This document shows, piece by piece, positions 52,212 through 64,000 of a DNA stretch of 64,000 nt (the first letter of the stretch is position 1; each line of letters starts with the position of its first letter). The notes beneath the pieces were generated by a model. That model ran no database searches. It was given only the letters and a program-made list of their open reading frames with translations, and was not told where the DNA came from. The position numbers were made by a program, and so were the translations under genes. The DNA lies in IMG/VR virus record IMGVR_UViG_3300024503_000015, positions 186,001 to 250,000 of that record. One strand, given 5' to 3'.

Positions 52212-52238
52212 CTCTCGAAGACAGGGCAAATGTTGTTT

Positions 52239-53084: not shown

Positions 53085-53086
53085 AA

Positions 53087-53458: not shown

Positions 53459-53467
53459 GATATCTCC

Positions 53468-53686: not shown

Positions 53687-53722
53687 TCAATTATTATATC
53701 TTCACTTCAATATTTTGTCAAT

Positions 53723-53797
53723 TGGTCCCGCTACTACGAATCGAACGTAGACTTACTCTTTAGGAGAGAGTCGTTCTATCCATTGAACTATAGCGAG
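53723..53797 (-). tRNA. tRNA-Arg(CCT)
   Basis: Cloverleaf by hand; ACTCT-CT CCT AA-AGAGT; encoded CCA. Confidence 0.88.
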
Positions 53798-53807
53798 GGA
53801 GGGAATT

Positions 53808-53915
53808 TGGTGTGACCGGGAGGGTTCGAACCTCCAAGGACGGCATATCGCCTAGTCCCGACCCACGGAGTGTTTCACAACAGTCCTGGAGCTCTGCCTA
53901 TTCGCTCACGGTCAC
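53808..53915 (-). ncRNA. tRNA-like RNA with expanded anticodon arm (108 nt)
   Basis: Perfect 7-bp acceptor stem, ACCA, D-arm and T-arm; ~41-nt branched insert instead of an anticodon loop; no variable loop. Confidence 0.7.
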
Positions 53916-53946
53916 ATACTAAGTATATAACCTTTTCAGCAGTTTG

Positions 53947-54387
53947 TCAACGGGTTATGAGGTATTCGTAGTTCACTGTGTTGTCGTTTTCTTGCAACAC
54001 ACAGGCACCATTTCTGATATGGAACTTGTAGGCCATTTCAGTTTTTGGGCTAAGTGTTACAAAACGATTAACAGTTGGGAAAAGTTCTTTTATTTGATCC
54101 ACTACACCAAAAAGTAGCTCTGCGGCCGCACCCGGCGCATAACTCCAAATTGTATAGAAGATTGCTGTAGTTGGTTCTGTGGGTGTTTTAGCCAAATCTT
54201 CAACAGTTGTTGGCACAAAATCGTGCAGACTAACACAGACCATTGCACGTGGTTTTTCGCCTTCTACAGTGGTGGCGACAAATCTGCTACCGCTAACACG
54301 AAATTCTTTGGGAATTTCTGGACGTACTGGATCATCCTTGATATAGTCAAGTAATGGATTAGTAGTTTCTCTGATTAATGTTAGCAT
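53947..54387 (-). CDS. GNAT-fold protein resembling the malonyl-CoA decarboxylase C-terminal domain
   Basis: AIFYTIWSY...FVTLSP compared with the MCD AVFYSI...TLSP motifs. Confidence 0.5.
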   Translation of the reverse strand: MLTLIRETTNPLLDYIKDDPVRPEIPKEFRVSGSRFVATTVEGEKPRAMVCVSLHDFVPTTVEDLAKTPTEPTTAIFYTIWSYAPGAAAELLFGVVDQIKELFPTVNRFVTLSPKTEMAYKFHIRNGACVLQENDNTVNYEYLITR

Positions 54388-54425
54388 ATAACTATTTAGC
54401 ATTTAGTGGGCAGATTATGGTGTTA

Positions 54426-54500
54426 TGGTGGTAACGGTGAGATTCGAACTCACACCTTGCTCCGTATGAAGGAGGTGCACGACCATTATGCTACGTTACC
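54426..54500 (-). tRNA. tRNA-Met/Ile2(CAT)
   Basis: Cloverleaf; loop TT CAT AC; CCA. Confidence 0.85.
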
Positions 54501-54502
54501 AG

Positions 54503-54739
54503 ATTATTAGTAAGATGTCCCGAGAGTTTTGGTTTGGGTAAGGCCATCCGACGGTGCGATTCGTCCCTCTCTTTGTCTAGCCCAACATGAAGTTCTTGTA
54601 GTCTCAATCCGCTCACCTTGCACCGGCGCTTGATACATATACTCTACAGCATTAAAGTTTATAACTTCAATTAACAAAAACTTCCGATCTTTGTTAACTC
54701 CTTGCGGATGCTTTTAGAACCTTAACTACTTACTAATAA
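54503..54739 (-). ncRNA. Candidate ~235-nt structured RNA
   Basis: 11-bp terminal stem; GCAA tetraloop; G-U-containing hairpins favour the minus strand. Confidence 0.5.
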
Positions 54740-54741
54740 AA

Positions 54742-55010
54742 GGGGTGGAGAGAGAAAGGCAAGTAATAGACTGGACAATGTACAAGCGGGCTCTATAAAG
54801 ATACCCTTAACAAGTCACAAGGCGCAAAGCACAGGGACCTGTATATTTCCAGTTAGCAACTCACAAAGTCGATTAATATATAGAACTGGTTCACACAAGC
54901 ACGAAACGTTTTCAAGACGTTTTGCCAGTAGTTGATGTTCGGTCTCTATAAGAGATCAAACCTTAGGCATGTAGCCTAAGTCTGTCTATCCTAATCTCCT
55001 TCTCTACTCC
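54742..55010. ncRNA. Candidate ~270-nt structured RNA
   Basis: Terminal 11-bp stem with three G-U pairs on the plus strand; several internal hairpins. Confidence 0.4.
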
Positions 55011-55039
55011 AGGCTCGGGCTTTCGCCTTTGCCAAAACT

Positions 55040-55113
55040 TGGTTGCGGGACCTGGAATCGAACCAGGATCTAGAGCTTATGAGACTCTTGAGTTACCGTT
55101 TCTCTATCCCGCG
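55040..55113 (-). tRNA. tRNA-fMet(CAT)
   Basis: C1:A72 mismatch; CT CAT AA; CCA. Confidence 0.85.
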
Positions 55114-55120
55114 ATAACTT

Positions 55121-55249
55121 TATAGGTGCTCTCTGTTCGACTCGAACGAAACCTGCTGAGCTCCTTATCTTCCTGGCACTTTCGGTGGGTAGTCGACTTA
55201 GCACCTAACTCGTGTTATCCAGTGTAGTTCAGCTCAGAGAGCATTTATA
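55121..55249 (-). ncRNA. Candidate tRNA-like structured RNA (~130 nt)
   Basis: TGCTCTCTG/CAGAGAGCA stem; T-loop TTCGAGT just before the 3' strand; no CCA. Confidence 0.45.
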
Positions 55250-55250
55250 A

Positions 55251-55449
55251 AGTGTCTAGCCACTCCCACCACAGGAGCCCTAAACCGAGCTGTTACTCTG
55301 TCCACTAGCCTTTCCATTTAGACGGTGCTGAGGTCCGCCTTTGTGATTTCTCAAGTCGCTTTAAACAAGCCTTGCGGTAGATCCAATGCACCGAGCCATT
55401 AAGGTGTAGCAATTACCTAACTCTATCACGCTGAGTTAACGCGGGGTCT
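55251..55449 (-). ncRNA. Candidate ~200-nt multi-hairpin RNA
   Basis: Non-coding; hairpins TAACTC/GAGTTA, AGGT/ACCT, CC-GCAA-GG, GGCGG/CCGTC and CTCC/GGAG. Confidence 0.4.
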
Positions 55450-55450
55450 G

Positions 55451-56023
55451 TTACAGTAAACCTTCTGCTTGCAGAACTGCTTCTGTTTTGTCAGACAATT
55501 GGATAGTTGTCTGAACATTTAACTCTAGGATTTCATCCTGAAGTTTTTGTTTCTGCTTTTTAGCAGTTGCCACTCTACGACGGAATCCGTCTAGATCTTC
55601 ACGAGTGAGCACACTAGTGTCTACTGTGTCGTTGTAGCCATAGATGCTACGACGGTTTTCGCTTTTGTCGTTACGGATCTTGTCCAAACGACCTGCTACA
55701 ACCTTTGCGCTTTCGCGAACGGTCTTACTAGCCAATCCGTTGTAGAATTGGATTTGTTTTTCTAGATGTGCAACATCGGCCAATCTAGTGTCGATTCTAA
55801 CTTCTGTGTTAGCACCGCTGACACTTTTACGAATCTCGTAAAGTGCTTCCACTAACGCATCTCTGCGTGTAAGGTTGTCGCAGAGTGTTCCTGCAACTTT
55901 GGAAATTTCTTGTTCCGCTTCTTGGAACTCGTTGATTTTTACTGTGGTCTCAAACTGGAAACCTTTGACGGTATCGTTGATACTGTTCTGAAGTGCATTT
56001 GCCTTACGTAGGGAGATATTCAT
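55451..56023 (-). CDS. Coiled-coil hypothetical protein inside the tRNA array
   Basis: Start refined to MNISLRKA (AAGGA SD); 190 aa, helical. Confidence 0.7.
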   Translation of the reverse strand: MNISLRKANALQNSINDTVKGFQFETTVKINEFQEAEQEISKVAGTLCDNLTRRDALVEALYEIRKSVSGANTEVRIDTRLADVAHLEKQIQFYNGLASKTVRESAKVVAGRLDKIRNDKSENRRSIYGYNDTVDTSVLTREDLDGFRRRVATAKKQKQKLQDEILELNVQTTIQLSDKTEAVLQAEGLL

Positions 56024-56089
56024 TTGTTTTTCCTTTAATGTTTCTATTATACAATCTTTTAAATCTAAATCAATGCCTTTTGGCAAAAC

Positions 56090-56165
56090 TGGAGCGGGAG
56101 ACGAGGTTCGAACTCGCGACATTTACCTTGGCAAGGTAATGCTCTACCAACTGAGCTACTCCCGC
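56090..56165 (-). tRNA. tRNA-Gly(GCC)
   Basis: Canonical cloverleaf; U73; CCA. Confidence 0.95.
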
Positions 56166-56213
56166 ATATGAAGAACCTAAGGCAAAGTTTATAACTTATC
56201 CAAAGGCCATATA

Positions 56214-56289
56214 TGGTACACGGTACGGGAATCGAACCCGTCTTACTGACGTGAAAGGCCAGTGTCCTAAACCGATAGACGAACCGTGC
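56214..56289 (-). tRNA. tRNA-Glu(TTC)
   Basis: Canonical cloverleaf; CCA. Confidence 0.93.
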
Positions 56290-56295
56290 ATTACT

Positions 56296-56371
56296 TGGCT
56301 CCCCAGGGTGGGATCGAACCACCGACACCCTGATTAACAGTCAGGTGCTACTACCGCTGAGCTACTAGGGA
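56296..56371 (-). tRNA. tRNA-Asn(GTT)
   Basis: Cloverleaf; G73; CCA. Confidence 0.93.
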
Positions 56372-56378
56372 ATAAACT

Positions 56379-56453
56379 TGGTACCTGGTGACAGTTTCGA
56401 ACTGCCGACCCTCTCGGTGTAAACGAGACGCTCTACCACTGAGCTAACCAGGC
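56379..56453 (-). tRNA. tRNA-Val(TAC)
   Basis: Canonical cloverleaf; CCA. Confidence 0.93.
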
Positions 56454-56463
56454 AAACTAACAT

Positions 56464-56540
<77 letters not shown>

Positions 56541-56545
56541 AATGA

Positions 56546-56621
56546 TGGAGCGGGAGGCGAGAGTTGAACTCGTCTATTTCAGTTTGGAAGACTGACGTGT
56601 AACCACAAACACTTCACCCGC
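56546..56621 (-). tRNA. tRNA-Gly(TCC)
   Basis: Cloverleaf; U73; CCA. Confidence 0.9.
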
Positions 56622-56627
56622 ATATTT

Positions 56628-56711
56628 TGGTGCCCCAGGAGAGACTCGAACTCTCACGGCTCTCGCCACTGGCTTCTAAGACCAGCGTGTCTACCATTCC
56701 ACCACCAGGGC
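56628..56711 (-). tRNA. tRNA-Leu(TAG)
   Basis: Class II with long variable arm; CCA. Confidence 0.92.
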
Positions 56712-56712
56712 A

Positions 56713-57516
56713 TTAACTGACAATACTATTTAAGTATTCCTGAATTGTCGTTGCAATTTTTTCTTGCACAGACAATTTAATTTTTGCATTCTCACCATTA
56801 GCACTCATATACTGTTTTCCGTATTCAGTACAATCTATACCAGTGTGCATAAACTCTTTAAAAATTTCTGAGTTGTCAGGATTAGGATCTCCAAACCTAA
56901 CAGTCGTCCATTTAATATTTTGAGAATCTAAAAACTTAATTAACATATTGTAACCATTTCTATGTCTACGAATATGCCAATCTTTGCTTTGACTTTTTTG
57001 AAAAGCAATACCGTTTAATCGCTTTTTATGAACTTCAATTGGATATCTATCTGGATTCCATTCTCCGTCTACATAATTTTCACGTTCAAATACATATCGT
57101 TGATTGTTATATTTGAAACTGTGTGCTATATGACTAAACGTGTAATCTGTAACTAATACATGATCCGGTTTAGGATTCTCTGCTAGGTACTGTTTTAATC
57201 TTTTGTGATGACCTATAAAATGTCCACCGTTAATAGATATATTAACTACATTGGAAACATTTAAGAAATTAGGCCATGCGGCTTTTTGTTCTTCTTCCCA
57301 TAGATAATGCCAAACAACATTTTCCATATTGCCATTGGGCATAGGTGTTGTAACATTGTTTTCTTTTCTATGTTTTAGATACCATTTAAAAACACTTCTA
57401 AAATCATTATGGAAACGTAGACTCCAAGTCCTCGGAGCATCGTCGTTGACTATGTCACCAGCCAAACAATTATTGCCATTACTTTGGCAATCTCCTAAAA
57501 TTAAAAGTGTTTTCAT
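56713..57516 (-). CDS. Hypothetical protein with SGNH-like N-terminus inside the tRNA array
   Basis: LLILGDCQS N-terminal block; 267 aa; more AT-rich than the flanking tRNAs. Confidence 0.65.
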   Translation of the reverse strand: MKTLLILGDCQSNGNNCLAGDIVNDDAPRTWSLRFHNDFRSVFKWYLKHRKENNVTTPMPNGNMENVVWHYLWEEEQKAAWPNFLNVSNVVNISINGGHFIGHHKRLKQYLAENPKPDHVLVTDYTFSHIAHSFKYNNQRYVFERENYVDGEWNPDRYPIEVHKKRLNGIAFQKSQSKDWHIRRHRNGYNMLIKFLDSQNIKWTTVRFGDPNPDNSEIFKEFMHTGIDCTEYGKQYMSANGENAKIKLSVQEKIATTIQEYLNSIVS

Positions 57517-57530
57517 ATTAATAGTTATCT

Positions 57531-57607
57531 TGGCGCACCGTAGGGGACTTGAACCCCTGGCCTCCGACGTGACAGGCCGGCGCTCTGACCAACTGAGCTA
57601 ACGGTGC
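57531..57607 (-). tRNA. tRNA-Asp(GTC)
   Basis: Canonical; G73; CCA. Confidence 0.95.
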
Positions 57608-57612
57608 AAATT

Positions 57613-57692
57613 CTATTCTGAAACACACTAACCAACTACCAGAAGCATTTATAATGCCGTTATTCGGTTCGAGCTAATGTGTTTTAGAATAG
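57613..57692 (-). ncRNA. Candidate small stem-closed RNA
   Basis: ~19-bp terminal stem with one A-C mismatch. Confidence 0.35.
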
Positions 57693-58572
57693 TGCTAACG
57701 CTGAGATTATACGTTAGCCAATAGTGCCTCTAGCATTATAGTCAGCCTTGCGAGCCAACCTTCTCTAGACATCCACATAAGCCATTACTGTACCTATGTC
57801 CACTATCAGCATCGCCGTTTTTAAAGACAGGCAGTAGTCTTGTCGCCATATGCTATTCTACGCTATCTACTCCGTTGACCTTGCGAGCCATTCAGCGGCG
57901 CTAACCACTTACGAAACTTCCAGCATAAACAGATTTCACCTTGCGAGCTACGTCTGACTCGATTACCTTGCGGCTCGAGTATTAGATGCTTTTCACATAT
58001 GACCGAGGCAGTCTTTGCATTTTATAATCGATAGTTGGGATCGAACCAACAGTCCATTGCTTAAGAGGCAATTGCGTTACCATTACGCTATATCAAACCT
58101 ACCGCGATGAGCTGCCTCTGTTGCTCAATAACCTTTTGGATTACTGAATACAACTCACCACATACCTTTTGTCTCGCGGACTACTCAGTGATATTTCACG
58201 ATCAATGTCCTGCATCAAAACAGTCCACTAACCATTAATATTGCATACAAGCCCTTAGGAGCGACCCCTTGGACAAATACACTACCCTTTCTCATACCAA
58301 TTCGCAAGTTGGTTTTGTTAGGAAGTCAGCACCACCCGTTACTTTTCATGCACCCTGGTTCCCTTGCGGGCCAGTCGATACACATTCTTTCCCTAACACT
58401 TGCTTCATTGTTACATCCACCGGTCTTCTCAGTGAACGCTACCTCGCGGTAGTGAGCAGGCTTGTTTACATGAACCATTACTGGCGGAGTTGCGTAGGCT
58501 TACCTCCTTTGGGTTGATCACTCAACTTATTCTTCGTCAACGGCGAACCGCCAACAGGATAATAAACTACCC
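57692..58572 (-). ncRNA. GOLLD-like giant ornate RNA (~880 nt)
   Basis: No credible ORF; five C(GCAA)G, three GCGA and one UUCG tetraloops on the minus strand; embedded tRNA; located in a tRNA array. Confidence 0.65.
58027..58097 (-). tRNA. tRNA-Lys(CTT)-like module embedded in the giant RNA (no CCA)
   Basis: GCGT/ACGC D-stem; ATTGC-CT CTT AA-GCAAT; GTTGG-TTCGATC-CCAAC; 6-bp acceptor stem; enclosed by GAGGCAG/CTGCCTC. Confidence 0.75.
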
Positions 58573-58582
58573 TTAAATTTTT

Positions 58583-58751
58583 ACCATTAAAAAATAACAT
58601 TACACCCTATGGGATGAAACGTATTTCTGAGTGGAGTTCGATTCTCCTCATAAGCCATTGTTCACGGTTTTCTCAGAAGGGTAAGATGGCCTTATCCTTC
58701 ATAAGTCTATGCGTCCATAGACGATACCCGTCAATGCTATTTCTTAATGGT
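58583..58751 (-). ncRNA. Stem-closed RNA whose 5' strand starts in the ACCA of tRNA-Tyr
   Basis: 19-bp stem (58733-58751 with 58583-58601) including two G-U pairs on the minus strand. Confidence 0.45.
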
Positions 58752-58833
58752 GGATGCGGCTGGAGTCGAACCAGCAGTGCCGTAAGGCGGCGGATTTACA
58801 GTCCACTGGGGTTACCAATTTTCCTACACATCC
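58748..58833 (-). tRNA. tRNA-Tyr(GTA)
   Basis: Class II cloverleaf; CCA. Confidence 0.92.
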
Positions 58834-58884
58834 ATATCTGCTTGAAATTTTTAAAGAACTAGGTTAATTTCTTAACTAGTCTCT

Positions 58885-58913
58885 ATTGTATATGAACTTT
58901 AGAAACTAGTCAA
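58885..58913 (-). promoter_or_regulatory. Internal sigma70-type promoter
   Basis: TTGACT-17 nt-TACAAT upstream of tRNA-Tyr and the giant RNA. Confidence 0.6.
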
Positions 58914-58920
58914 GACATTT

Positions 58921-59015
58921 TGGCAGTGAGTAAGGGATTCGAACCCTTGATCCCCGTTTTTGCAGGAATGCCTTCTTAGCAGGAAGGTGCCTTCGACCAG
59001 CTCGGCCAACTCACT
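58921..59015 (-). tRNA. tRNA-Ser(GCT)
   Basis: Class II; G73; CCA. Confidence 0.9.
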
Positions 59016-59023
59016 ATATTTGT

Positions 59024-59052
59024 ATTATACGATCAACTGTTAAACAAGTCAA
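59024..59052 (-). promoter_or_regulatory. Internal sigma70-type promoter
   Basis: TTGACT-17 nt-TATAAT upstream of tRNA-Ser(GCT). Confidence 0.65.
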
Positions 59053-59059
59053 CACCTTT

Positions 59060-59149
59060 TGGCCGAAGCGGTGAGATTCGAACTCACGGACCCTTTCGGA
59101 TCGTCTGTTTTCAAGACAGGTGCAATAAACCGGACTCTGCCACGCTTCG
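59060..59149 (-). tRNA. tRNA-Ser(TGA)
   Basis: Class II; G73; CCA. Confidence 0.92.
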
Positions 59150-59195
59150 TTGTTTTACTTGTATAATTCGTTGTAGATAGAATCTGCTACAAATG

Positions 59196-59273
59196 TGGTA
59201 CCCCTGCTCCGATTCGAACGGAGAGAACTTCTCCTTTTGAGAGAGACGACTTTACCAATTTGTCCACAGGGGT
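59196..59273 (-). tRNA. tRNA-Leu(CAA), short variable loop
   Basis: TCTCT-CT CAA AA-GGAGA; 6-nt variable region; CCA. Confidence 0.85.
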
Positions 59274-59278
59274 ATATC

Positions 59279-59352
59279 TGGTGCTCAAGGAAAGAATCGA
59301 ACTTTCGATTGTGTCGTACCAAGACACTGGTATACCATTTACCTACAAGAGC
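59279..59352 (-). tRNA. tRNA-Thr(GGT)
   Basis: Cloverleaf with two U-U mismatches in the acceptor stem; CCA. Confidence 0.8.
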
Positions 59353-59354
59353 CT

Positions 59355-59426
59355 TGGCGCCTCTGAGTAGATTCGAACTACTATAACCTGGTTTAGAAGA
59401 CCTGGCACTGCTCCATCAGCAGAGGC
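59355..59426 (-). tRNA. tRNA-Arg(TCT), degenerate D-arm
   Basis: CAGGT-CT TCT AA-ACCAG (4 of 5 bp); perfect acceptor and T-arm; CCA. Confidence 0.65.
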
Positions 59427-59427
59427 A

Positions 59428-59504
59428 TGGTACCCTTGGTTGGATTCGAACCTACACACAACGGATTTTAAATCCATTCGCATTACCAATTAGCGTACAA
59501 GGGC
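59428..59504 (-). tRNA. tRNA-Leu(TAA), short variable loop
   Basis: ATGGA-TT TAA AA-TCCGT; 5-nt variable region; CCA. Confidence 0.85.
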
Positions 59505-59511
59505 ATAATTA

Positions 59512-59587
59512 TGGTGCCGCCCCTTGGGATCGAACCAAGTTCCTCGGTGCTTCAAACCGGTGCAATGACCACATTTGCTAAAGCGGC
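59512..59587 (-). tRNA. tRNA-Phe(GAA)
   Basis: Cloverleaf; CCA. Confidence 0.9.
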
Positions 59588-59593
59588 GATATT

Positions 59594-59668
59594 TGGGGTG
59601 AAGCCGGGAATCGAACCCTGCCTTACTGTTTCACAGACAGCCGTGCGGACCACTACACTAGCAACACC
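59594..59668 (-). tRNA. tRNA-His(GTG)
   Basis: G-1:C73; anticodon GTG; imperfect acceptor and T-stem. Confidence 0.8.
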
Positions 59669-59670
59669 AT

Positions 59671-59747
59671 TGGCCGGCCCTGAGAGACTCGAACTCCCAA
59701 CCTCCAGTTTCGAAGACTGGCACTCTAATCCATTGAGTTAAGGACCG
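59671..59747 (-). tRNA. tRNA-Arg(TCG)
   Basis: CCAGT-CT TCG AA-ACTGG; CCA. Confidence 0.88.
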
Positions 59748-59754
59748 TTAAAAT

Positions 59755-59828
59755 TGGCAGGCCTACCAGGACTCGAACCTGGAACGACTGAGTCAAAGTC
59801 AGTTGTGTTACCATTACACCATAGGCCA
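59755..59828 (-). tRNA. tRNA-Gln(TTG)
   Basis: Unpaired 1-72; G73; CT TTG AC; CCA. Confidence 0.9.
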
Positions 59829-59838
59829 ACAGATTGAA

Positions 59839-60051
59839 TTTGTAAGTAGTTGCCCCATCGTTATAGCAACCATTCACCCATGTATATAAAGCCGGCTGGG
59901 ACTCGGTACGTCACTTGGGATACTAGTCCAGTTAGCAACCAATCTGCAGGGATCTTCCGATCCCCCGGGAGTTGAACCCGTCCCCTTTTACTATTAAGGT
60001 AGTTCGAACTTACCTACAATAGCGTGACATTCTCTTGCTGACACTTACAAA
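59839..60051 (-). ncRNA. YrlA/Y-RNA-like RNA with a circularly permuted tRNA domain
   Basis: Order T-arm (CGGG-TTCAACT-CCCG), 7-bp acceptor-like hairpin capped by GGAA, D-like arm with TGG, all inside a long terminal stem (TTTGTAAGT/ACTTACAAA). Confidence 0.6.
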
Positions 60052-60054
60052 ACT

Positions 60055-60129
60055 TGGTGCCCCAGGATGGAATCGAACCACCACACCCTGCTTACAAAAC
60101 AGGACCTCTACCACTAAGGATACAAGGGC
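60055..60129 (-). tRNA. tRNA-Thr(TGT)
   Basis: Cloverleaf; CCA. Confidence 0.9.
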
Positions 60130-60134
60130 AAAAT

Positions 60135-60212
60135 TGGTCTCCACGGTACGATTCGAACGTACAGCCTCCTGACTCCAGATCAGGCCGTCTACCAGATTGA
60201 CATTACGCAGAG
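60135..60212 (-). tRNA. Non-canonical tRNA-Pro(TGG)
   Basis: C1-G72, A73; anticodon loop TC TGG AG (C33, A37); CCA. Confidence 0.65.
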
Positions 60213-60222
60213 ATAAAAATAA

Positions 60223-60298
60223 TTGCGACCGAAGGACTCGAACCTTCGCGGTAATCTAGAATGCCCCGGCAAGGCCGGTTAACCCACCATTGTCGCAA
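60223..60298 (-). ncRNA. tRNA-like remnant without CCA or a normal anticodon arm
   Basis: TTGCGAC/GTCGCAA stem; GAAGG-TTCGAGT-CCTTC T-arm; CCGGC-CTT-GCCGG hairpin. Confidence 0.5.
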
Positions 60299-60301
60299 AT
60301 T

Positions 60302-60376
60302 TGGTGGAGGCCGAGGAAATCGAATCCTTCTAGACATCTTCCTTGCAAGGGAAGACCGTAGCCCACTACTGCCCCC
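60302..60376 (-). tRNA. tRNA-Ala(TGC), minimal D-arm
   Basis: G3-U70; CT TGC AA; D-arm GTAG-TGGG-CTAC; CCA. Confidence 0.8.
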
Positions 60377-60380
60377 AAAT

Positions 60381-60416
60381 TGGTGTTAGTTTCTATACCA
60401 CCCATTGAAACTAACA
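60381..60416 (-). ncRNA. CCA-terminated minihelix candidate
   Basis: TGTTAGTTTC-13 nt-GAAACTAACA-CCA. Confidence 0.35.
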
Positions 60417-60461
60417 AACATTGAGAGAACATGGATGAACCCACAAGATCTCTATTTGCTC

Positions 60462-60536
60462 TGGTATAGCGTACGGGGATCGAACCCGCCTAGTCACCTT
60501 GAAAGGGTGATGACCTCCCCAGAAGTCGAACGCTAT
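60462..60536 (-). tRNA. tRNA-Glu(TTC), second divergent copy
   Basis: TCACC-CT TTC AA-GGTGA; CCA. Confidence 0.82.
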
Positions 60537-60542
60537 GTAAAT

Positions 60543-60616
60543 TGGTTCCTGGACCGAGAATTGAACTCAGAATGACCGGTTATCAGCCGATTGTTATACC
60601 ATTTAACTATCCAGGA
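60543..60616 (-). tRNA. tRNA-Ile(GAT)
   Basis: Cloverleaf; CCA. Confidence 0.92.
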
Positions 60617-60625
60617 ATAATACTA

Positions 60626-60701
60626 TACAAAAAGAAACTAACGACAATGCGCTATGCACCCAGAGTCTATAGTTCCTGGCTGTGGTTAGTTTGTTTTTAT
60701 A
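60626..60701 (-). ncRNA. Candidate small stem-closed RNA
   Basis: 17-position terminal stem with one C-C mismatch; inner CCAGG/TCTGG and GC-ATA-GC hairpins. Confidence 0.35.
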
Positions 60702-60703
60702 CA

Positions 60704-60804
60704 CTACCATATGGAAGCACTCTTATGCCTTTTTCGTCATAAGATGGTGGCCCGTCCTTACTACTGACGCTATGCGACCAGTTAAGAATGCTTTCATATG
60801 GTAG
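60704..60804 (-). ncRNA. Stem-closed RNA whose 5' strand includes the CTACCA end of tRNA-Lys(TTT)
   Basis: 22-position stem with one A-C mismatch and one G-U pair. Confidence 0.45.
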
Positions 60805-60873
60805 GGGCACAGAGAATCGAACTCTGATTTACGGGTTAAAAGCCCGCTACTTTAACCATTAAGTTATACCCCC
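60799..60873 (-). tRNA. tRNA-Lys(TTT)
   Basis: Cloverleaf; CCA. Confidence 0.92.
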
Positions 60874-60876
60874 ATA

Positions 60877-60952
60877 TGGTCCCTGCTGTGAGATTCGAAC
60901 TCACACCTCATTGATTAAGAGTCAAGTGCGCTACCATTGACGCTAAACAGGG
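60877..60952 (-). tRNA. tRNA-Lys(CTT)
   Basis: Cloverleaf; CCA. Confidence 0.9.
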
Positions 60953-61014
60953 TTGTACGTATTGATTTGATTTTACGTGCCAACCCTAGACCATACGGGA
61001 GATCTAGAGTGACA

Positions 61015-61035
61015 CTAACGTTTAGCACGTTTCAT
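61015..61035 (-). CDS. Micro-ORF MKRAKR ending in TAG, followed by a long hairpin
   Basis: AAGGAGAG SD 4 nt before ATG; ATG AAA CGT GCT AAA CGT TAG. Confidence 0.5.
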   Translation of the reverse strand: MKRAKR

Positions 61036-61047
61036 GCTACTCTCCTT

Positions 61048-61110
61048 TTAATATTTTTTCAAAACTTGATACAACACGAACATTATAACTAACACTACAA
61101 GTACTGCCAT
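61048..61110 (-). CDS. 20-aa hydrophobic peptide
   Basis: AAGGAGA SD; MAVLVVLVIMFVLYQVLKKY. Confidence 0.55.
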   Translation of the reverse strand: MAVLVVLVIMFVLYQVLKKY

Positions 61111-61123
61111 AATATTCTCCTTA

Positions 61124-61213
61124 TGGTCCCCCGTTGAGGAATCGAACCTCATCCTGGACCTTATCTAGATTAATCGGTTATAAGCCGACCTGCTCTCCAT
61201 GAGCTAACGGGGG
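61124..61213 (-). tRNA. tRNA-Ile(TAT) with enlarged variable region
   Basis: GTCGG-CT TAT AA-CCGAT; 21-nt variable region; perfect acceptor and T-arm; CCA. Confidence 0.75.
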
Positions 61214-61221
61214 ATATAACC

Positions 61222-61299
61222 TGGAGCAACGGGTCAGATTTGAACTGACGGTTTTACGGATTTGCAATCCGTTGCATTGGGCCTCTCTGCCACCGTTGC
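61222..61299 (-). tRNA. tRNA-Cys(GCA)
   Basis: U73; TT GCA AA; CCA. Confidence 0.92.
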
Positions 61300-61304
61300 A
61301 TTAT

Positions 61305-61379
61305 TGGCGTACCCCCAGGGACTCGAACCCCGACTAGCAGTTTTGGAGACTGTCGTGCTGCCATTAACACTAGGGATAC
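61305..61379 (-). tRNA. tRNA-Trp(CCA)
   Basis: G73; CT CCA AA; CCA end. Confidence 0.92.
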
Positions 61380-61400
61380 ATAACACTCTCTTTCGAAAGT

Positions 61401-61466
61401 GTGTATTAAAGCATACTACTCATCGGCTACTGCCATTTGATTGTTCGGCAGTATGCTTTAATACGC
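61401..61466 (-). ncRNA. Long hairpin element
   Basis: GTATTAAAGCATACT/AGTATGCTTTAATAC 15-bp perfect stem; alternative TACTGCC/GGCAGTA pairing. Confidence 0.4.
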
Positions 61467-61579
61467 TACCTTTTTACACATTCTAGTTATCGCCTAGAAC
61501 TTACCATCCGGTAGGCCGCCCACATTAAGCCCATGTTTTACGTGCAGGCAGGGTCGCGTTCCCTATAACACGTTTGAGA

Positions 61580-61750
61580 TTAGTCTTGCTCTACGAGCTC
61601 AACTTCTCTCTTGTAAAGTGCTGTGTGATAAGCACGAGCACGATTAAACTTTTCTTCGATGAGTTTTTCAAAAGCATCGTCGTCCAGTTCATGCTCACTT
61701 AGCACTTTGGCACTTTTCTGTTTTCTAAAATCTTCAAAATTCATTTTCAT
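61580..61750 (-). CDS. 56-aa charged helical protein, first gene after the attenuator
   Basis: Hand translation MKMNFEDFRKQKSAKVLSEHELDDDAFEKLIEEKFNRARAYHTALYKREVELVEQD. Confidence 0.6.
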   Translation of the reverse strand: MKMNFEDFRKQKSAKVLSEHELDDDAFEKLIEEKFNRARAYHTALYKREVELVEQD

Positions 61751-61763
61751 TTCCAAATCTTAC

Positions 61764-61800
61764 AAAACAAAAAACCCTGGGTTTTTAGTCCAGGGTTCTT
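61764..61800 (-). terminator. Intrinsic terminator (attenuator) upstream of the tRNA array
   Basis: AAGAACCCTGG-ACTAAAAAC-CCAGGGTTTTT followed by TGTTTT. Confidence 0.85.
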
Positions 61801-61852
61801 AAAAGTTATTGTGTATGTTACTGTTAACTTACACGATCCTCCAAGAACCCTA
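61791..61852 (-). promoter_or_regulatory. Antiterminator hairpin mutually exclusive with the terminator
   Basis: TAGGGTTCTTGGAGG pairs at all 15 positions (including G-U) with CTTTTAAGAACCCTG; inner GTGTA.GTTA/TAAC.TACAC hairpin covers the leader stop codon. Confidence 0.75.
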
Positions 61853-61985
61853 CGATAATCTCAGGTGTACGATCATTACCTAGACCTAGCCCGACATTAC
61901 TAAACTGTGACCAATAGGCGGACATACATGCCGGCGCTTTGGCTTGTTTAGATATCGTTTGTCTATGTAAACTAATCGTTTGCAT
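61824..61985 (-). CDS. 53-aa leader peptide containing all 20 amino acids
   Basis: Hand translation MQTISLHRQTISKQAKAPACMSAYWSQFSNVGLGLGNDRTPEIIVGFLEDRVS; its last codons form the antiterminator. Confidence 0.7.
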   Translation of the reverse strand: MQTISLHRQTISKQAKAPACMSAYWSQFSNVGLGLGNDRTPEIIVGFLEDRVS

Positions 61986-62043
61986 TTTGTTTCTCTTTTT
62001 CTTACCTTCTTAAAAGTTGTAGCGGAATTGCTACTGTCTTTGT

Positions 62044-62072
62044 ATTGTAATGCCTTTCAACATCTTTGTCAA
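62044..62072 (-). promoter_or_regulatory. sigma70-type promoter P2 of the tRNA operon
   Basis: TTGACA-17 nt-TACAAT. Confidence 0.7.
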
Positions 62073-62136
62073 CATCTTTTTGTCTTTTTTGGACAACCTA
62101 ATGTTTTGTGGAAAGTGATTGCTTTACAATATTTGT

Positions 62137-62165
62137 ATTATATGAGTATTTATAAAACTTGTCAA
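62137..62165 (-). promoter_or_regulatory. sigma70-type promoter P1 with an embedded TATAAATA late motif
   Basis: TTGACA-AGTTTTATAAATACTCA-TATAAT. Confidence 0.75.
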
Positions 62166-62222
62166 TACCTATGTTGAAATGTGGCGATTTTGCAACATTT
62201 TGAAAACCGCCACACTTTTGTA

Positions 62223-62741
62223 TTAACCGTTTAGTACTTTTGCTAGACTATTGATCACTGCGGCAATACGTCCGATGTCACGAAGTTGTTCTACGGTGTA
62301 GCCTTCCTTCTTCAATGTTTCGTAGTGCGCCTTAACACAGAAATGACACTTGCCAACAATACTTGCGGCAAGACTGTATGCTTCAAAGCGAGCCTTGGTA
62401 GTTCCGCCATGGCTTGCGATAGCGTTCATGCGTAACTGTGCTGGCAAGCCCTTTAGTTGCTCATCGTCTGCCATCTCAACATATGGATACCAAACGTTGT
62501 TCTGTGCCATAATTGAACCAGCGGTCATCGCGGCATCACGTTCTTTTTCGTCTGTGATGTTGCTCATGATGAAACTAATCAATTTTCCATTGCCGGTGCT
62601 CATAGCCGCGGCCAATGCACAACCTTCTGCTTCTACAACATCTGATAGTGTACTACGCTTGATTACTGCATCCAGATTTAGTTTTGTGTCCTTGGCGTAT
62701 TCTGGTAAACCTTCTTTTAATTGATCAACCCATTGTGTCAT
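62223..62741 (-). CDS. ahpD: Alkylhydroperoxidase reductase AhpD
   Basis: LPEYAKDTKLNL, MAQNNVWY and SIVGKCHFCVKAH (CxxC); downstream of ahpC. Confidence 0.9.
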   Translation of the reverse strand: MTQWVDQLKEGLPEYAKDTKLNLDAVIKRSTLSDVVEAEGCALAAAMSTGNGKLISFIMSNITDEKERDAAMTAGSIMAQNNVWYPYVEMADDEQLKGLPAQLRMNAIASHGGTTKARFEAYSLAASIVGKCHFCVKAHYETLKKEGYTVEQLRDIGRIAAVINSLAKVLNG

Positions 62742-63160
62742 AGTGTGTCTCCTTTAGTTGCTTTGGCTATGCTTTTATAGCCTTTGTAAGTTGGGTGTAC
62801 GTGATCCGGGCTAGTTTCGTGCTTTCTAGCATCTATTACAAAGTCCTTGTATTTTTCTGCTACTGCAAGAACTGCCCGTCTCTTATCGTCCTTGATATTA
62901 GGTACAATCCAATAAACACGAGTGGCGTCTACTAGTTGTCTTAGACTGTCTAGTTCCTCCACTGTGTTTATTTTTGCTGTATCGTTTGACCCTAGACTAA
63001 TGATTACATTTTTTGCCTGTGTAGTGCCCTGAGTGTGTAACACATGACGATTAACATAGTCATAACTGTTAATGCCACTCTTAGCACGAGTAACACATTC
63101 TGTACGAACTTGTCCTACTCCTACTGCTAGGCTATCGCCTAGGATTAAACAATCAAGCAT
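62738..63160 (-). CDS. SGNH/GDSL hydrolase
   Basis: ILGDSL, SLGSND and DHVHP blocks. Confidence 0.85.
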   Translation of the reverse strand: MLDCLILGDSLAVGVGQVRTECVTRAKSGINSYDYVNRHVLHTQGTTQAKNVIISLGSNDTAKINTVEELDSLRQLVDATRVYWIVPNIKDDKRRAVLAVAEKYKDFVIDARKHETSPDHVHPTYKGYKSIAKATKGDTL

Positions 63161-63171
63161 AATTGATCCTA

Positions 63172-63711
63172 TCAAAGAGTTTCGCCGCCTACTGTACGGT
63201 TACAAGCGCACAACTCACCAGTTTGTAGCGCATCAAGAATACGTAAAGTTTCTTCTGGGCTACGACCAACGTTCAAGTTGTTGACAGTAACGTGCTGGAT
63301 AACGTTCTCTGGGTCAACAATAAATGTAGCACGTAGAGCCGCACCTGCTGGAGCATAAAATACACCCAACTGCTCAATCAATGACAACTCGCCACGCTGT
63401 GTGTCTGCAAATTGTGTATGTGTAATTTTCTGTAAGTCTGGGTGTGCTTTTTGCCATGCGATTTTACAAAACTCGTTATCTGTGCTACCTGTTAGCAATA
63501 CTGCGTCACGGTCAGCAAAGTCACCTGCTAGTTTATCGTAGGCTACAATCTCTGTAGGGCAAACGAATGTGAAGTCCTTTGGGTAGTAAACGATTACTTT
63601 CCACTTGCCAGCAAAACTTTCATCTGTAATGTCAAAGAAAGCATCTTCTGGTTGTCCTGGCTTAACACCAGTAATTGCGAATTTTTCTAATTTATGTCCA
63701 ACTGTTTTCAT
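63172..63711 (-). CDS. ahpC: Peroxiredoxin AhpC
   Basis: YYPKDFTFVCPTE, RATFIVDP, VGRS and GELCACN motifs. Confidence 0.95.
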   Translation of the reverse strand: MKTVGHKLEKFAITGVKPGQPEDAFFDITDESFAGKWKVIVYYPKDFTFVCPTEIVAYDKLAGDFADRDAVLLTGSTDNEFCKIAWQKAHPDLQKITHTQFADTQRGELSLIEQLGVFYAPAGAALRATFIVDPENVIQHVTVNNLNVGRSPEETLRILDALQTGELCACNRTVGGETL

Positions 63712-63845
63712 TTGTTTCTCCTTGTGTGTGTTTGAAAACTATAACAACTCTTCGTTGTATGTGTATATTATATATCCTATTAAAATGCAAAATCAATAGG
63801 TTTTTCCAATAATTATTTTAATAACGCTTATAGGTTTTTTCAATA

Positions 63846-63868
63846 ACAAAAGGGCCCGAAGGCCCTTT
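63846..63868 (-). terminator. Intrinsic terminator
   Basis: AAAGGGCC-TTCG-GGCCCTTTT. Confidence 0.8.
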
Positions 63869-63884
63869 ATTAATTTTGGTTTGA

Positions 63885-64000
63885 TTAGAAACCGTACTTG
63901 TAACCAACACTTACTACGTTACTGTTGATATCACCTTCCTGGCGATCAAATCCAAGAAAGGCTGTACCATTTTTAGTAACACCGTAGTCAGCACCAATTC
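63885..64000 (-). CDS. C-terminus of an outer-membrane beta-barrel (porin-like) protein, partial
   Basis: Hand translation ...IGADYGVTKNGTAFLGFDRQEGDINSNVVSVGYKYGF*; amphipathic beta-strands ending in Y-x-F (BAM signal pattern). Confidence 0.6.
   Translation of the reverse strand, partial: IGADYGVTKNGTAFLGFDRQEGDINSNVVSVGYKYGF

What the first reader, a model, noticed from the sequence alone, without database searches (positions are those of the whole stretch)
60970..61047. MKRAKR-UAG micro-ORF followed by a long stem-loop: possible readthrough or termination sensor
Seen: AAGGAGAG SD, then ATG AAA CGT GCT AAA CGT TAG. The G of TAG begins a 13-bp bulged hairpin (GTGTCA-CTCTAGA / TCTAGGG-T-TGGCAC). 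The frame stays open for 13 more codons (CHSRSPVWSRVGT-TAA). It lies directly upstream of the two tRNA-Lys genes, and its codons are Lys/Arg-rich. Established: stem-loops 3' of UAG promote readthrough or recoding in other systems. Inference: either a recoding cassette or a local Lys/Arg- or RF1-sensing element controlling processing or stability of the downstream tRNA-Lys pair.
Basis: partly seen in the sequence, partly recalled or inferred. Interest (0 to 1): 0.62.

Follow-up and report, generated by a model that had tools for sequence, protein, structure and literature searches.

The report
Lysine-codon leader switch before tRNA-Lys genes
A tiny translated reading frame with fixed lysine codons, followed by an RNA hairpin that can instead pair across the processing sites of the two downstream lysine tRNAs, is conserved in about 200 uncultured freshwater phage contigs and looks like a ribosome-operated switch controlling lysine-tRNA maturation, a kind of control I found no description of.

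Summary
It lies on the minus strand: SD, ATG AAA CGT GCT AAA CGT TAG, then a 15-bp hairpin starting at the G of TAG, directly upstream of tRNA-Lys(CUU) and tRNA-Lys(UUU).

It is not a chance feature. About 200 IMG/VR phage contigs carry the same module, always before this tRNA-Lys pair.

- **The ORF is kept, the peptide is not.** There are 28 different peptides of 6-9 codons, with indels only in triplets. In 152/152 unique contexts the penultimate codon is AAA, codon 2 is AAA/AAG, and the stop is TAG, whose G is the first hairpin base.
- **The hairpin has a second set of partners.** Its 3' arm also pairs with the leader end plus tRNA-Lys(CUU) nt 1-3. Its loop also pairs with tRNA-Lys(CUU) ACCA, the spacer and the 5' end of tRNA-Lys(UUU), 10-14 bp. 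Both covary strongly.
- **Readthrough is not conserved.**

Best reading: a trp-leader-like four-segment attenuator. Its output is masking of both RNase P sites and acceptor stems rather than a terminator, and ribosome position (stalled at AAA versus at UAG) sets it. The mechanism is inferred, not shown. There was no Rfam family, no cultured-phage match and no literature hit.

The parts
61040..61047 (-). Shine-Dalgarno AAGGAGAG of the leader ORF
   Evidence: An SD-like tetramer sits 6-8 nt before the ATG in 122 of 129 unique family contexts.
61015..61035 (-). Leader micro-ORF ATG AAA CGT GCT AAA CGT TAG (MKRAKR). The control codons AAA lie at 61030-61032 and 61021-61023. The stop TAG lies at 61015-61017.
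   Evidence: Searches found 28 peptide variants of 6-9 codons. The penultimate codon is AAA in 152/152 contexts. The stop was TAG in 124/124 loci found without constraining the ORF.
61001..61015 (-). Segment 2: the 5' arm of hairpin P1 (GUGUCACUCUAGAUC). GUGUC is invariant. This arm can alternatively pair with the SD/start region.
   Evidence: (P1 z = -14.9).
60977..61000 (-). Segment 3: P1 loop (UCCCGUAU) plus 3' arm (GGUCUAGGGUUGGCAC). It is antisense to both tRNA junctions; the strand that is fully paired in the alternative fold is 60981-61001.
60957..60976 (-). P2 small hairpin (GUA...UAC in the window; CGUAA/UUACG or AUUAAA/UUUAAU in relatives)
   Evidence: The stem sequence changes between lineages while pairing is kept. 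This was read by eye and not scored column by column.
60949..60955 (-). P3 target: leader end CAA plus tRNA-Lys(CUU) nt 1-4 (CCCU). It spans the RNase P site of tRNA-Lys(CUU).
   Evidence: One search gives 7 bp, -11.6 kcal/mol. One search gives z = -14.1. In one search, tRNA nt 3 covaries with the leader (CCC/GGG, CCA/UGG, CCU/AGG).
60877..60952 (-). tRNA-Lys(CUU), with C1-G72, C2-G71, A73 and an encoded CCA
60869..60882 (-). PK target: tRNA-Lys(CUU) G71-A76, spacer UAU and tRNA-Lys(UUU) G1-G5. It spans the RNase P site of tRNA-Lys(UUU).
   Evidence: One search gives 14 bp, -23.9 kcal/mol. One search found at least 10 consecutive pairs in 89/100 unique loci, with loop and spacer length covarying. 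One search gives z = -12.5.
60799..60873 (-). tRNA-Lys(UUU), which reads the AAA control codons

Best explanation
The region is the 5' leader of a two-gene tRNA-Lys unit. I propose that it works as a ribosome-operated four-segment RNA switch with the same logic as the trp/his leader attenuators but a different output.

**The four segments**
- Segment 1 is the SD plus a 6-9 codon ORF.
- Segment 2 is the 5' arm of hairpin P1.
- Segment 3 is the P1 loop plus 3' arm.
- Segment 4 is the two junctions where RNase P must cut: the leader/tRNA-Lys(CUU) junction, and the tRNA-Lys(CUU)-CCA/spacer/tRNA-Lys(UUU) junction.

**The two folds**
- Pairing 2:3 (P1) locks the antisense strand away, so both tRNAs can fold and be matured.
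- Pairing 3:4 (P3 plus the long loop-junction helix, together 21 nt of continuous leader strand) buries both cleavage sites. It also unzips 3 and 5 base pairs of the two acceptor stems.

**How the ribosome sets the fold**
- A ribosome waiting for Lys-tRNA at an AAA codon covers segment 1 and leaves segment 2 free. With the invariant penultimate AAA in the A site, the first P1 base (the G of UAG) sits exactly 11 nt from the first P-site base. From my own knowledge, that is the published position of the ribosomal helicase entrance. P1 therefore forms and tRNA-Lys is released.
- A ribosome that reaches UAG holds the invariant GUGUC of segment 2, so 3:4 forms and maturation is blocked.
- With no ribosome, segment 2 can pair with the SD/start region (1:2), and 3:4 forms again.

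**Net effect:** negative feedback of Lys-tRNA(UUU) supply on phage tRNA-Lys production.

**Shown:** conservation, coding-frame constraint, codon invariance, covariation of P1, P3 and PK, exclusive linkage to tRNA-Lys, and the geometry.
**Inferred:** translation in vivo, ribosome control of the fold, RNase P as the affected step, and the direction of regulation.
For: 1. **Family size and linkage.** 76 of 78 hits to the ORF pattern share the whole architecture. More than 120 further loci were found with patterns on the loop and 3' arm only. In every locus with enough sequence, tRNA-Lys(CUU) starts at +80 to +88 (4 loci at +115), and tRNA-Lys(UUU) follows in nearly all (3 lack it; 1 carries only it), while the upstream neighbour varies. 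An SD micro-ORF precedes 185/195 tRNA-Lys(CUU) genes, against 0-11% for every other tRNA species in the same arrays.

2. **Translation.** The ATG is invariant and the SD sits 6-8 nt upstream in 122/129 contexts. ORF length classes are 21, 24, 27 and 30 nt, so indels come only in triplets. There are 28 different peptides, so the peptide itself is not selected.

3. **Control codons.** The penultimate codon is AAA in 152/152 contexts. Codon 2 is AAA in 140 and AAG in 9. Genome-wide, Lys is 5.7% of codons and AAA is 68% of Lys codons.

4. **Alternative helices.** Native versus permuted partners give: P1 -10.1 vs -6.6 kcal/mol (z -14.9); P3 -9.7 vs -6.6 (z -14.1); PK -20.4 vs -16.8 (z -12.5). Controls differ by only 0.2-0.5 kcal/mol. 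PK runs at least 10 consecutive pairs from the UGGU/ACCA anchor in 89/100 loci. An extra U in the loop is matched by an extra A in the spacer, and G.U pairs are tolerated, which points to the RNA level. tRNA nt 3 covaries with the leader.

5. **Bistability.** P1 alone is about -20 to -21 kcal/mol. The unconstrained MFE of the full precursor shows PK in 127/128 and P3 in 111/128 family members.

6. **1:2 pairing.** The SD pairs with the 5' arm in 119/146 nascent-fragment folds, against 47% with shuffled arms.

7. **No terminator.** None is present on this strand.

8. **Transcript position.** Some relatives have a TTGACA-N17-TGnTACAAT promoter about 22-29 nt before the ATG, so the ORF sits at the transcript 5' end.

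9. **Context.** An RNA-repair gene set lies just beyond the array: an Rnl1-like ligase (phrog_562, 2.8e-50), a P-loop polynucleotide-kinase-like protein and a phosphoesterase. tRNA-Lys is a known target of PrrC and PARIS (PMC10264068; PMC11464382).
Against: - There is no experimental evidence of translation, of either fold, or of any effect on processing.
- The RNA-library contigs spanning 60909-61334 may come from DNA carry-over, and contigs show no ends.
- Nearest-neighbour folding ignores tRNA tertiary structure, so the predicted dominance of the 3:4 fold is uncertain.
- With the helicase-boundary constraint, only 27/128 precursors flip to P1 in the MFE. The model therefore needs co-transcriptional kinetics.
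- RNase P is inferred only from where the complementarity lies.
- The invariance of UAG is only partly explained, by the G being the first P1 base and by UAG being a slow stop.
- The 1:2 pairing is not universal and could not be tested by covariation, because the SD is invariant.
- P3 is weak (4 bp) in some lineages. One locus lacks tRNA-Lys(CUU), and four loci have a 33-nt insertion before the tRNA.
- No analogous leaders exist for other tRNAs, so this is not a general principle of these arrays.
Confidence: 0.5

Rival explanations
1. Processing scaffold. In this reading the composite helix (leader loop and 3' arm paired with both flanks of tRNA-Lys(CUU)) is the productive structure, like the flanking stems of rRNA operons. 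It would present a roughly 21-bp duplex to RNase III or another nuclease, or fix the order of processing. The micro-ORF would only clear or reset the leader.
For: The 3:4 fold is the predicted ground state in nearly all members. PK plus P3 form a continuous 21-nt paired leader strand. Both helices covary.
Against: It does not explain the invariant AAA codons, the fixed AAA-NNN-UAG spacing to the hairpin, or why a competing hairpin P1 covaries just as strongly. The helix destroys part of both acceptor stems, which RNase P needs.
Confidence: 0.2
2. Termination (RF1) or amber-suppression sensor. In this reading the dwell time at the invariant UAG, or readthrough by a phage amber-suppressor tRNA, decides how far the ribosome invades P1. 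The Lys codons would be secondary.
For: TAG is invariant, although it is the rarest stop in this genome at 9 of 213 long ORFs. The genome encodes a tRNA with anticodon CUA at G000 252503-252576, 2.5 kb beyond the window. Nine related loci, with at least four different sequences, carry one too.
Against: A suppressor tRNA was seen in only a minority of loci within the fetched flanks. What follows the UAG in frame is not conserved. The G of UAG is needed as the first P1 base pair anyway. This reading does not explain the invariance of AAA or the linkage to tRNA-Lys.
Confidence: 0.1
3. T-box-like direct tRNA sensing without translation. AAA would act as a specifier for the UUU anticodon, and the loop UGGU would pair with the ACCA end of uncharged tRNA-Lys.
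For: UGGU/ACCA complementarity is invariant (positions 0-3). AAA is invariant.
Against: There is no T-box (RF00230) or any other Rfam hit. The complementarity continues for 10-14 bp into the spacer and the next tRNA, so it is pairing in cis with the precursor. The SD, ATG, in-frame TAG and triplet-only indels argue for translation.
Confidence: 0.05
4. Functional hexapeptide or bar-like minigene. The product MKRAKR, or peptidyl-tRNA drop-off, would be the point, and the hairpin would only stabilise the mini-mRNA.
For: A strong SD and a very short ORF. The 3' hairpin is stable.
Against: There are 28 different peptides sharing only M-K...K-x. The hairpin covaries with the tRNA junctions, which a stabiliser would not need.
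Confidence: 0.05
5. Programmed readthrough or recoding cassette producing an extended peptide.
For: A hairpin lies directly 3' of UAG. The frame is open for 13 codons in the window. A suppressor-like tRNA is present in the genome.
Against: The extension is not conserved in length, frame or sequence. 38/110 variants stop after 3 codons.
Confidence: 0.02

Closest known systems
Leader-peptide (ribosome-mediated) attenuators of amino-acid operons (trpL, hisL, pheL, thrL, leuL)
   Same: A short translated leader with codons cognate to the regulated product. Overlapping mutually exclusive helices (1:2, 2:3, 3:4). A stop codon placed so that a terminating ribosome occupies segment 2. The position of the stalled ribosome decides the fold.
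   Different: The 3:4 structure is not an intrinsic terminator: there is no U-tract. Instead it is an antisense helix across two RNase P sites and acceptor-stem ends. The regulated genes are tRNAs, not biosynthetic ORFs. It is encoded by a phage, and the ORFs are much shorter (6-9 codons, 2 control codons).
T-box riboswitches
   Same: A cis leader tied to one tRNA identity, and a UGGN-type sequence complementary to the tRNA NCCA end.
   Different: No Stem I, specifier-loop or T-box sequence was detected, and there is no Rfam hit. Pairing is in cis with the unprocessed precursor and is 10-14 bp long. The leader carries the hallmarks of a translated ORF. It sits before tRNA genes rather than aaRS or biosynthesis genes.
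Translation-dependent leader switches of resistance genes (ermC, cat-type attenuation)
   Same: A micro-ORF with an SD, and a ribosome paused in the leader that remodels a downstream hairpin.
   Different: Those free an SD for translation of a downstream ORF and sense a drug. Here the downstream targets are tRNA processing sites and the conserved feature is a Lys codon.
Phage countermeasures for tRNA-Lys loss (T4 Pnk/Rnl1 repair after PrrC; T5 non-cleavable tRNA-Lys against PARIS)
   Same: The same tRNA species is at stake. This phage carries Rnl1-like, kinase-like and phosphoesterase genes next to the array.
   Different: Those are proteins or variant tRNAs. No regulatory leader that senses Lys decoding turned up for them in my literature searches.

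Membership tests
Leader-peptide transcription attenuator (trpL type) | Short leader ORF with a ribosome-binding site and start and stop codons | tested here: met
   The SD lies 6-8 nt before an invariant ATG. The TAG is in frame in all loci. Indels occur only in triplets.
Leader-peptide transcription attenuator (trpL type) | Control codons cognate to the regulated product | tested here: met
   AAA is the penultimate codon in 152/152 contexts, and codon 2 is AAA/AAG in 149/152. The downstream genes are always tRNA-Lys.
Leader-peptide transcription attenuator (trpL type) | Mutually exclusive overlapping helices supported by covariation | tested here: met
   P1 competes with P3 plus PK, with z = -12.5 to -14.9 in the permuted-partner tests. 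The 1:2 pairing is only enriched, 81% against 47%.
Leader-peptide transcription attenuator (trpL type) | The 3:4 helix is an intrinsic terminator (GC hairpin followed by a U-tract) ahead of the structural genes | tested here: not met
   There is no terminator-like site on the minus strand in 60500-61600. The 3:4 helix involves the tRNA junctions themselves.
T-box riboswitch (RF00230) | Match to the T-box covariance model (Stem I, specifier loop, conserved T-box sequence) | tested here: not met
   The Rfam scan at E up to 1 over 53000-64000 gave no hit in 60953-61053.
T-box riboswitch (RF00230) | UGGN bulge pairing with the NCCA end of the tRNA | tested here: inconclusive
   UGGU/ACCA is invariant, but it is part of a 10-14 bp helix formed in cis with the precursor.
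Programmed stop-codon readthrough / recoding signal | Conserved in-frame coding sequence downstream of the leaky stop | tested here: not met
   The next in-frame stop lies anywhere from 9 to more than 60 nt downstream. 38/110 variants have it at 12 nt. Extension sequences are unrelated.
Programmed stop-codon readthrough / recoding signal | Stimulatory RNA structure just 3' of the stop | tested here: met
   The hairpin begins at the G of UAG.
Minigenes of the lambda bar type | An SD plus a 2-3 codon ORF whose toxicity rests on peptidyl-tRNA drop-off | not testable with these tools
   The ORF here is 6-9 codons. Drop-off cannot be assessed in silico.
Any curated Rfam family | Covariance-model match at or near the gathering score | tested here: not met
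   Only tRNA models hit the flanks. Nothing hits the leader.

The most novel reading that the evidence does not exclude
A phage-encoded autoregulatory attenuator for tRNA genes. The leader ORF would read out the cell's capacity to decode AAA. When host tRNA-Lys(UUU) is depleted, for instance by a PrrC- or PARIS-type nuclease, stalled ribosomes would flip the leader so that the phage's own tRNA-Lys pair is released for RNase P maturation. That would make it a built-in sensor and response to a tRNA-targeting defence, and, as far as my searches reach, the first case of ribosome-mediated attenuation acting on tRNA processing rather than on transcription or translation.
Probability: 0.25. Interest if true: 0.9.

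Novelty: new variant of a known kind. Interest (0 to 1): 0.8.

Why it matters
If the model holds, tRNA supply can be regulated by the decoding of its own codon, through a leader ORF acting on precursor folding and RNase P access. That would extend the attenuation principle to RNA processing and to tRNA genes. It would also give phage tRNA arrays, usually treated as passive codon supplements or decoys, a regulated and sensing component, aimed at the tRNA that several anti-phage nucleases attack. The module is small (about 250 nt), self-contained and sometimes has its own sigma-70-type promoter. It is therefore directly testable in laboratory strains and could be reused as a sensor of Lys-tRNA status. 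Even if the mechanism differs, this is a widespread, strongly covarying RNA element that no Rfam family matched in my scan.

Tried and rejected
- **Column-based covariation.** RNAalifold on the MAFFT alignment recovered only the P1 base, because indels in the loop and arms break the columns. I replaced it with anchored walks and permuted-partner duplex tests. I did not type long dot-bracket strings into the count of structure pairs, and I built no covariance model.
- **A closing helix around the whole module.** Pairing between the region upstream of the SD (or the ORF) and the conserved sequence after tRNA-Lys(UUU) showed no signal (z +0.5 and -0.8).
- **GACAU(G)/GUGUC pairing across the start codon.** It is present in about 70% of members, but the flanking position does not covary and it is absent in the window.
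- **Conserved readthrough product.** Rejected.
- **TAG reassignment in this genome.** Removing TAG as a stop lengthens ORFs less than removing TGA or TAA does.
- **Analogous leader ORFs before other tRNAs.** None above background.
- **Cultured or deposited phages.** No match to the leader at E up to 10.
- **GTDB genomes.** Three true hits, all on short contigs of freshwater MAGs (Ca. Planktophila, Bacteroidetes, Polynucleobacter), probably binned phage DNA, plus one false hit. No host could be assigned.
- **Literature.** 'MKRAKR' gave 0 papers. Searches on phage tRNA-Lys, leader peptides and RNase P found no description.
- **Metatranscriptome contigs.** They cover the leader in four riverine RNA libraries, but they cannot show transcription, ends or processing.

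Full report
**Setting.** The window is positions 186001-250000 of a single 270,181-bp contig with 39.5% G+C. The contig carries tail and baseplate genes, a DNA ligase and other phage genes, so it is a jumbo phage. On the minus strand, 53723-61379 holds an array of 31 tRNA genes. The finding lies in the 171-nt spacer between a 90-nt tRNA-Ile(UAU) (61124-61213) and tRNA-Lys(CUU) (60877-60952).

**Observation.** Read on the minus strand, the spacer holds, in order:
- a 20-codon hydrophobic micro-ORF (61110-61048);
- the SD AAGGAGAG (61047-61040);
- ATG AAA CGT GCT AAA CGT TAG (61035-61015);
- a hairpin from the G of TAG to 60977;
- a small second hairpin;
- four more bases, then tRNA-Lys(CUU), UAU, and tRNA-Lys(UUU).

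The hairpin folds at -21.2 kcal/mol with z = -5.0. The whole spacer has z = -4.5.

**Not a singleton.** A degenerate pattern for the hexapeptide ORF found 78 IMG/VR contigs. 76 of them share the SD, ORF, TAGTGTC, hairpin, GGCAC and what follows. That pattern forced the peptide, so I then scanned with two patterns lying only on the hairpin loop and 3' arm. All 124 new loci with enough sequence have TAGTGTC at the hairpin base and an in-frame ATG-initiated ORF.

**What is conserved in the ORF.**
- There are 28 different peptides, including MKRAKR, MKRSGKR, MKRGKL, MKRTGKL, MKASAKQ, MKLDKI and MKDTAKQ.
- ORF lengths are 21, 24, 27 or 30 nt, and in the alignment the indels are 3, 6 or 9 columns.
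- In 152 unique contexts the penultimate codon is always AAA. Codon 2 is AAA (140) or AAG (9). The last codon varies (CGU, CGA, CUC, CUG, CAG, CUU, AGC, CCC, AUC). The stop is always UAG.
- An SD-like tetramer ends 6-8 nt before the ATG in 122/129 contexts.
- In the phage's own long ORFs, Lys is 5.7% of codons and AAA is 68% of Lys codons. TAG is the rarest stop, at 9/213.

So selection keeps a translated frame, two Lys codons at fixed places and a UAG. It does not keep a peptide.

**Linkage to tRNA-Lys.**
- In every locus with enough downstream sequence, tRNA-Lys(CUU) begins 80-88 nt after the ATG. Four loci with a 33-nt insertion have it at +115.
- tRNA-Lys(UUU) follows 2-7 nt later in nearly all (three loci lack it there, and one has only tRNA-Lys(UUU)).
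- The upstream neighbour can be almost any tRNA or a small ORF.
- Across all fetched loci, 185 of 195 tRNA-Lys(CUU) genes have an SD micro-ORF within 130 nt upstream. Every other tRNA species has one in 0-11% of cases, mostly spurious frames inside neighbouring tRNAs.
- The two tRNAs themselves are far more diverged than the leader.

**RNA structure: three sets of pairings involve the hairpin.**
1. **P1.** GUGUC plus a variable arm pairs with a variable arm plus GGCAC. The variable parts covary (AUCC/GGAU, AACC/GGUU, GCUC/GGGUU and others).
2. **P3.** The 3' arm of P1 is also complementary to the last 3-4 leader bases plus tRNA-Lys(CUU) nt 1-3. This tRNA always starts C1 C2, and its third base covaries with the leader: CCC with GGG, CCA with UGG, CCU with AGG.
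3. **PK.** The P1 loop and the top of its 3' arm are the reverse complement of tRNA-Lys(CUU) A73-C-C-A, the spacer, and the first 3-6 bases of tRNA-Lys(UUU). Loop CCCGUAUGG goes with spacer UAU, CCCGUAUUGG with AUAU/AUAC, CCCCAUGUAUUGG with AUAUAU, CCCGUAUAUGG with UAUA plus CGGGG, and ACUCCGUGUAUGG with UAUA plus CGGAGU.

Walking outward from the invariant UGGU/ACCA anchor, 89 of 100 unique loci have at least 10 consecutive canonical pairs. Pair types switch in concert and G.U pairs are accepted, so the constraint is on RNA of this strand.

A permuted-partner test on 100 unique loci gives:

| Pairing | Native (kcal/mol) | Permuted (kcal/mol) | z |
|---|---|---|---|
| P1 | -10.1 | -6.6 | -14.9 |
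| P3 | -9.7 | -6.6 | -14.1 |
| PK | -20.4 | -16.8 | -12.5 |

Two control pairings differ by only 0.2-0.5 kcal/mol. In the window, PK is 14 bp (-23.9 kcal/mol) and P3 is 7 bp (-11.6 kcal/mol). Together they pair a continuous 21-nt leader strand, 61001-60981.

**Two folds.** P1 excludes P3 and the full PK. Both P3 and PK straddle an RNase P cleavage site. They also take 3 and 5 base pairs from the acceptor stems of tRNA-Lys(CUU) and tRNA-Lys(UUU). Unconstrained folding of the whole precursor predicts the P3+PK fold in nearly all of 128 unique members (PK in 127, P3 in 111). In the window's fold, the freed 5' arm then pairs with the SD. In nascent fragments that end after the 5' arm, the SD is paired with that arm in 119/146 members, against 47% when the arm is shuffled. 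P1 alone is about -20 kcal/mol and is transcribed before its competitors. The element therefore looks bistable, with kinetics deciding the outcome. These are nearest-neighbour predictions that ignore tRNA tertiary structure.

**Geometry.** The distance from the penultimate AAA to the hairpin never varies: AAA NNN UA, then G as the first P1 base. With AAA in the A site, that G is 11 nt from the first P-site base. From my own knowledge, this is the position reported for the ribosomal mRNA helicase entrance (not checked in the paper library), so P1 can be complete. Two codons later, with UAG in the A site, six bases (the invariant GUGUC plus one) must be single-stranded.

**Mechanism proposed.** This is the segment logic of the trp leader.
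- Segment 1 is the SD plus ORF, segment 2 the 5' arm, segment 3 the loop plus 3' arm, and segment 4 the tRNA junctions.
- A stall at a Lys codon gives 2:3, so the tRNAs are free.
- An unhindered run to the stop gives 3:4, so the tRNAs are masked.
- No ribosome gives 1:2 and 3:4.

The output differs from classical attenuation. No terminator is present, and the 3:4 helix is an intramolecular antisense across processing sites. The likely result is feedback from Lys-tRNA(UUU) availability to maturation of the phage's tRNA-Lys pair. The direction of regulation and the role of RNase P are inferences.

**Context that fits.** Just beyond the array lie a dual-specificity-phosphatase-like gene, a metallophosphoesterase (phrog_547), an Rnl1-like RNA ligase (phrog_562, 2.8e-50), a P-loop kinase with a polynucleotide-kinase match, and a 3'-5' exoribonuclease. 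This is the composition of an RNA healing-and-sealing set. In T4, that pathway repairs tRNA-Lys cut by PrrC (PMC10264068). PARIS also destroys host tRNA-Lys, and T5 escapes with its own tRNA-Lys (PMC11464382). This is circumstantial. Some relatives have a textbook TTGACA-N17-TGnTACAAT promoter 22-29 nt before the ATG, which places the ORF at the very 5' end of a dedicated transcript.

**Rivals.**
- A processing-scaffold role for the composite helix is compatible with the covariation but leaves the codon and spacing invariance unexplained.
- A UAG/RF1 or suppression sensor is kept alive by the invariant TAG and by a tRNA with anticodon CUA in this genome (252503-252576, outside the window) and in nine related loci. 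However, the sequence after the stop is not conserved.
- A T-box-like mechanism, a functional peptide and programmed readthrough are each contradicted by specific results.

**Expression.** Six riverine metatranscriptomes hold most of the 2.4-kb stretch. In the four laid, identical contigs span 60909-61334, which covers the leader plus part of tRNA-Lys(CUU) and the upstream tRNAs. A loose end matches a related leader variant. These are contigs, so DNA carry-over cannot be excluded and no ends can be read. I count this as presence only.

**Known or new.**
- Rfam 15 has no family for the leader.
- 50,697 deposited phage genomes have no match.
- GTDB representatives give three true hits, on short contigs of freshwater MAGs.
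- The paper library has nothing on the peptide or on such a leader.

It works like a leader-peptide attenuator but fails that family's terminator criterion, and it regulates tRNA genes. I file it as a new variant of a known kind, found so far only in uncultured freshwater phages.

Noticed in passing
window 57698-58161 (-): A full-length GOLLD RNA (RF02032, 207 bits against a gathering score of 150, E 7e-58) sits inside the tRNA array. A second tRNA-Lys(CUU) (58025-58098) is embedded in it.
   Followed up: no
window 48888-52706 (-): An RNA-repair-like gene set lies just beyond the tRNA array. It comprises a DSP-type phosphatase-like gene (52239-52706), a metallophosphoesterase (51610-52305), an Rnl1-like RNA ligase (50733-51683, phrog_562 2.8e-50), a P-loop kinase with a polynucleotide-kinase match (50048-50506), and an Rv2179c-like 3'-5' exoribonuclease (48888-49421).
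   Followed up: partly
G000:C1:252503-252576 (-), 2.5 kb beyond the window end; also L007, L021, L041, L056, L064, L168, L183: An amber-suppressor-like tRNA with anticodon CUA is present. TAG ends only 9 of 213 long ORFs, and there is no sign that TAG is reassigned. At least four different CUA tRNAs occur in related contigs.
   Followed up: partly
window 61048-61110 (-): A second micro-ORF with a strong SD (TAAGGAGAA) encodes a 20-residue hydrophobic peptide, MAVLVVLVIMFVLYQVLKKY. Its stop TAA abuts the SD of the Lys leader. The same C-terminus (…VLYQVLKKY) precedes the leader in a few relatives such as L012, L032 and L187.
   Followed up: no
window 61124-61213 (-): tRNA-Ile(UAU) is 90 nt long with its anticodon at position 32. 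90-92-nt versions recur in many related arrays. The extra length is unexplained (an insertion or an unusual arm).
   Followed up: no
window 60785-60798 (-) and the same place in relatives: The sequence directly after the CCA of tRNA-Lys(UUU) is conserved across the family (UAUAAAAACACAUU and variants; UAUGAAAGCAUUCU in the window). It does not covary with the leader. It could be a processing signal or the 3' boundary of the module.
   Followed up: partly
window 60139-60211 (-) and spacer 60130-60461: Rfam gives a weak tRNA hit (31.6 bits) that ARAGORN does not call. It lies in a 330-nt G+C-richer spacer of the array.
   Followed up: no
window 61567-61864: Contigs of three RNA libraries join 61567/61571 to 61857/61864, skipping about 290 nt that contain the 58-codon ORF at 61580-61756. 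The short sides are only 20-22 nt, so this may be a strain variant.
   Followed up: no
window 62223-63711 (-): Three genes unusual for a phage sit just upstream of the tRNA array: an AhpD/CMD-like protein, a GDSL-type hydrolase-like protein (below the Pfam cut-offs) and an AhpC/peroxiredoxin.
   Followed up: no
relatives, e.g. L099, L135, L136, L145, L160 (22-29 nt before the leader ATG): Consensus sigma-70-type promoters with an extended -10 (TTGACA-N17-TGATACAAT) lie directly upstream of the leader ORF in about 10 of 149 unique contexts.
   Followed up: partly
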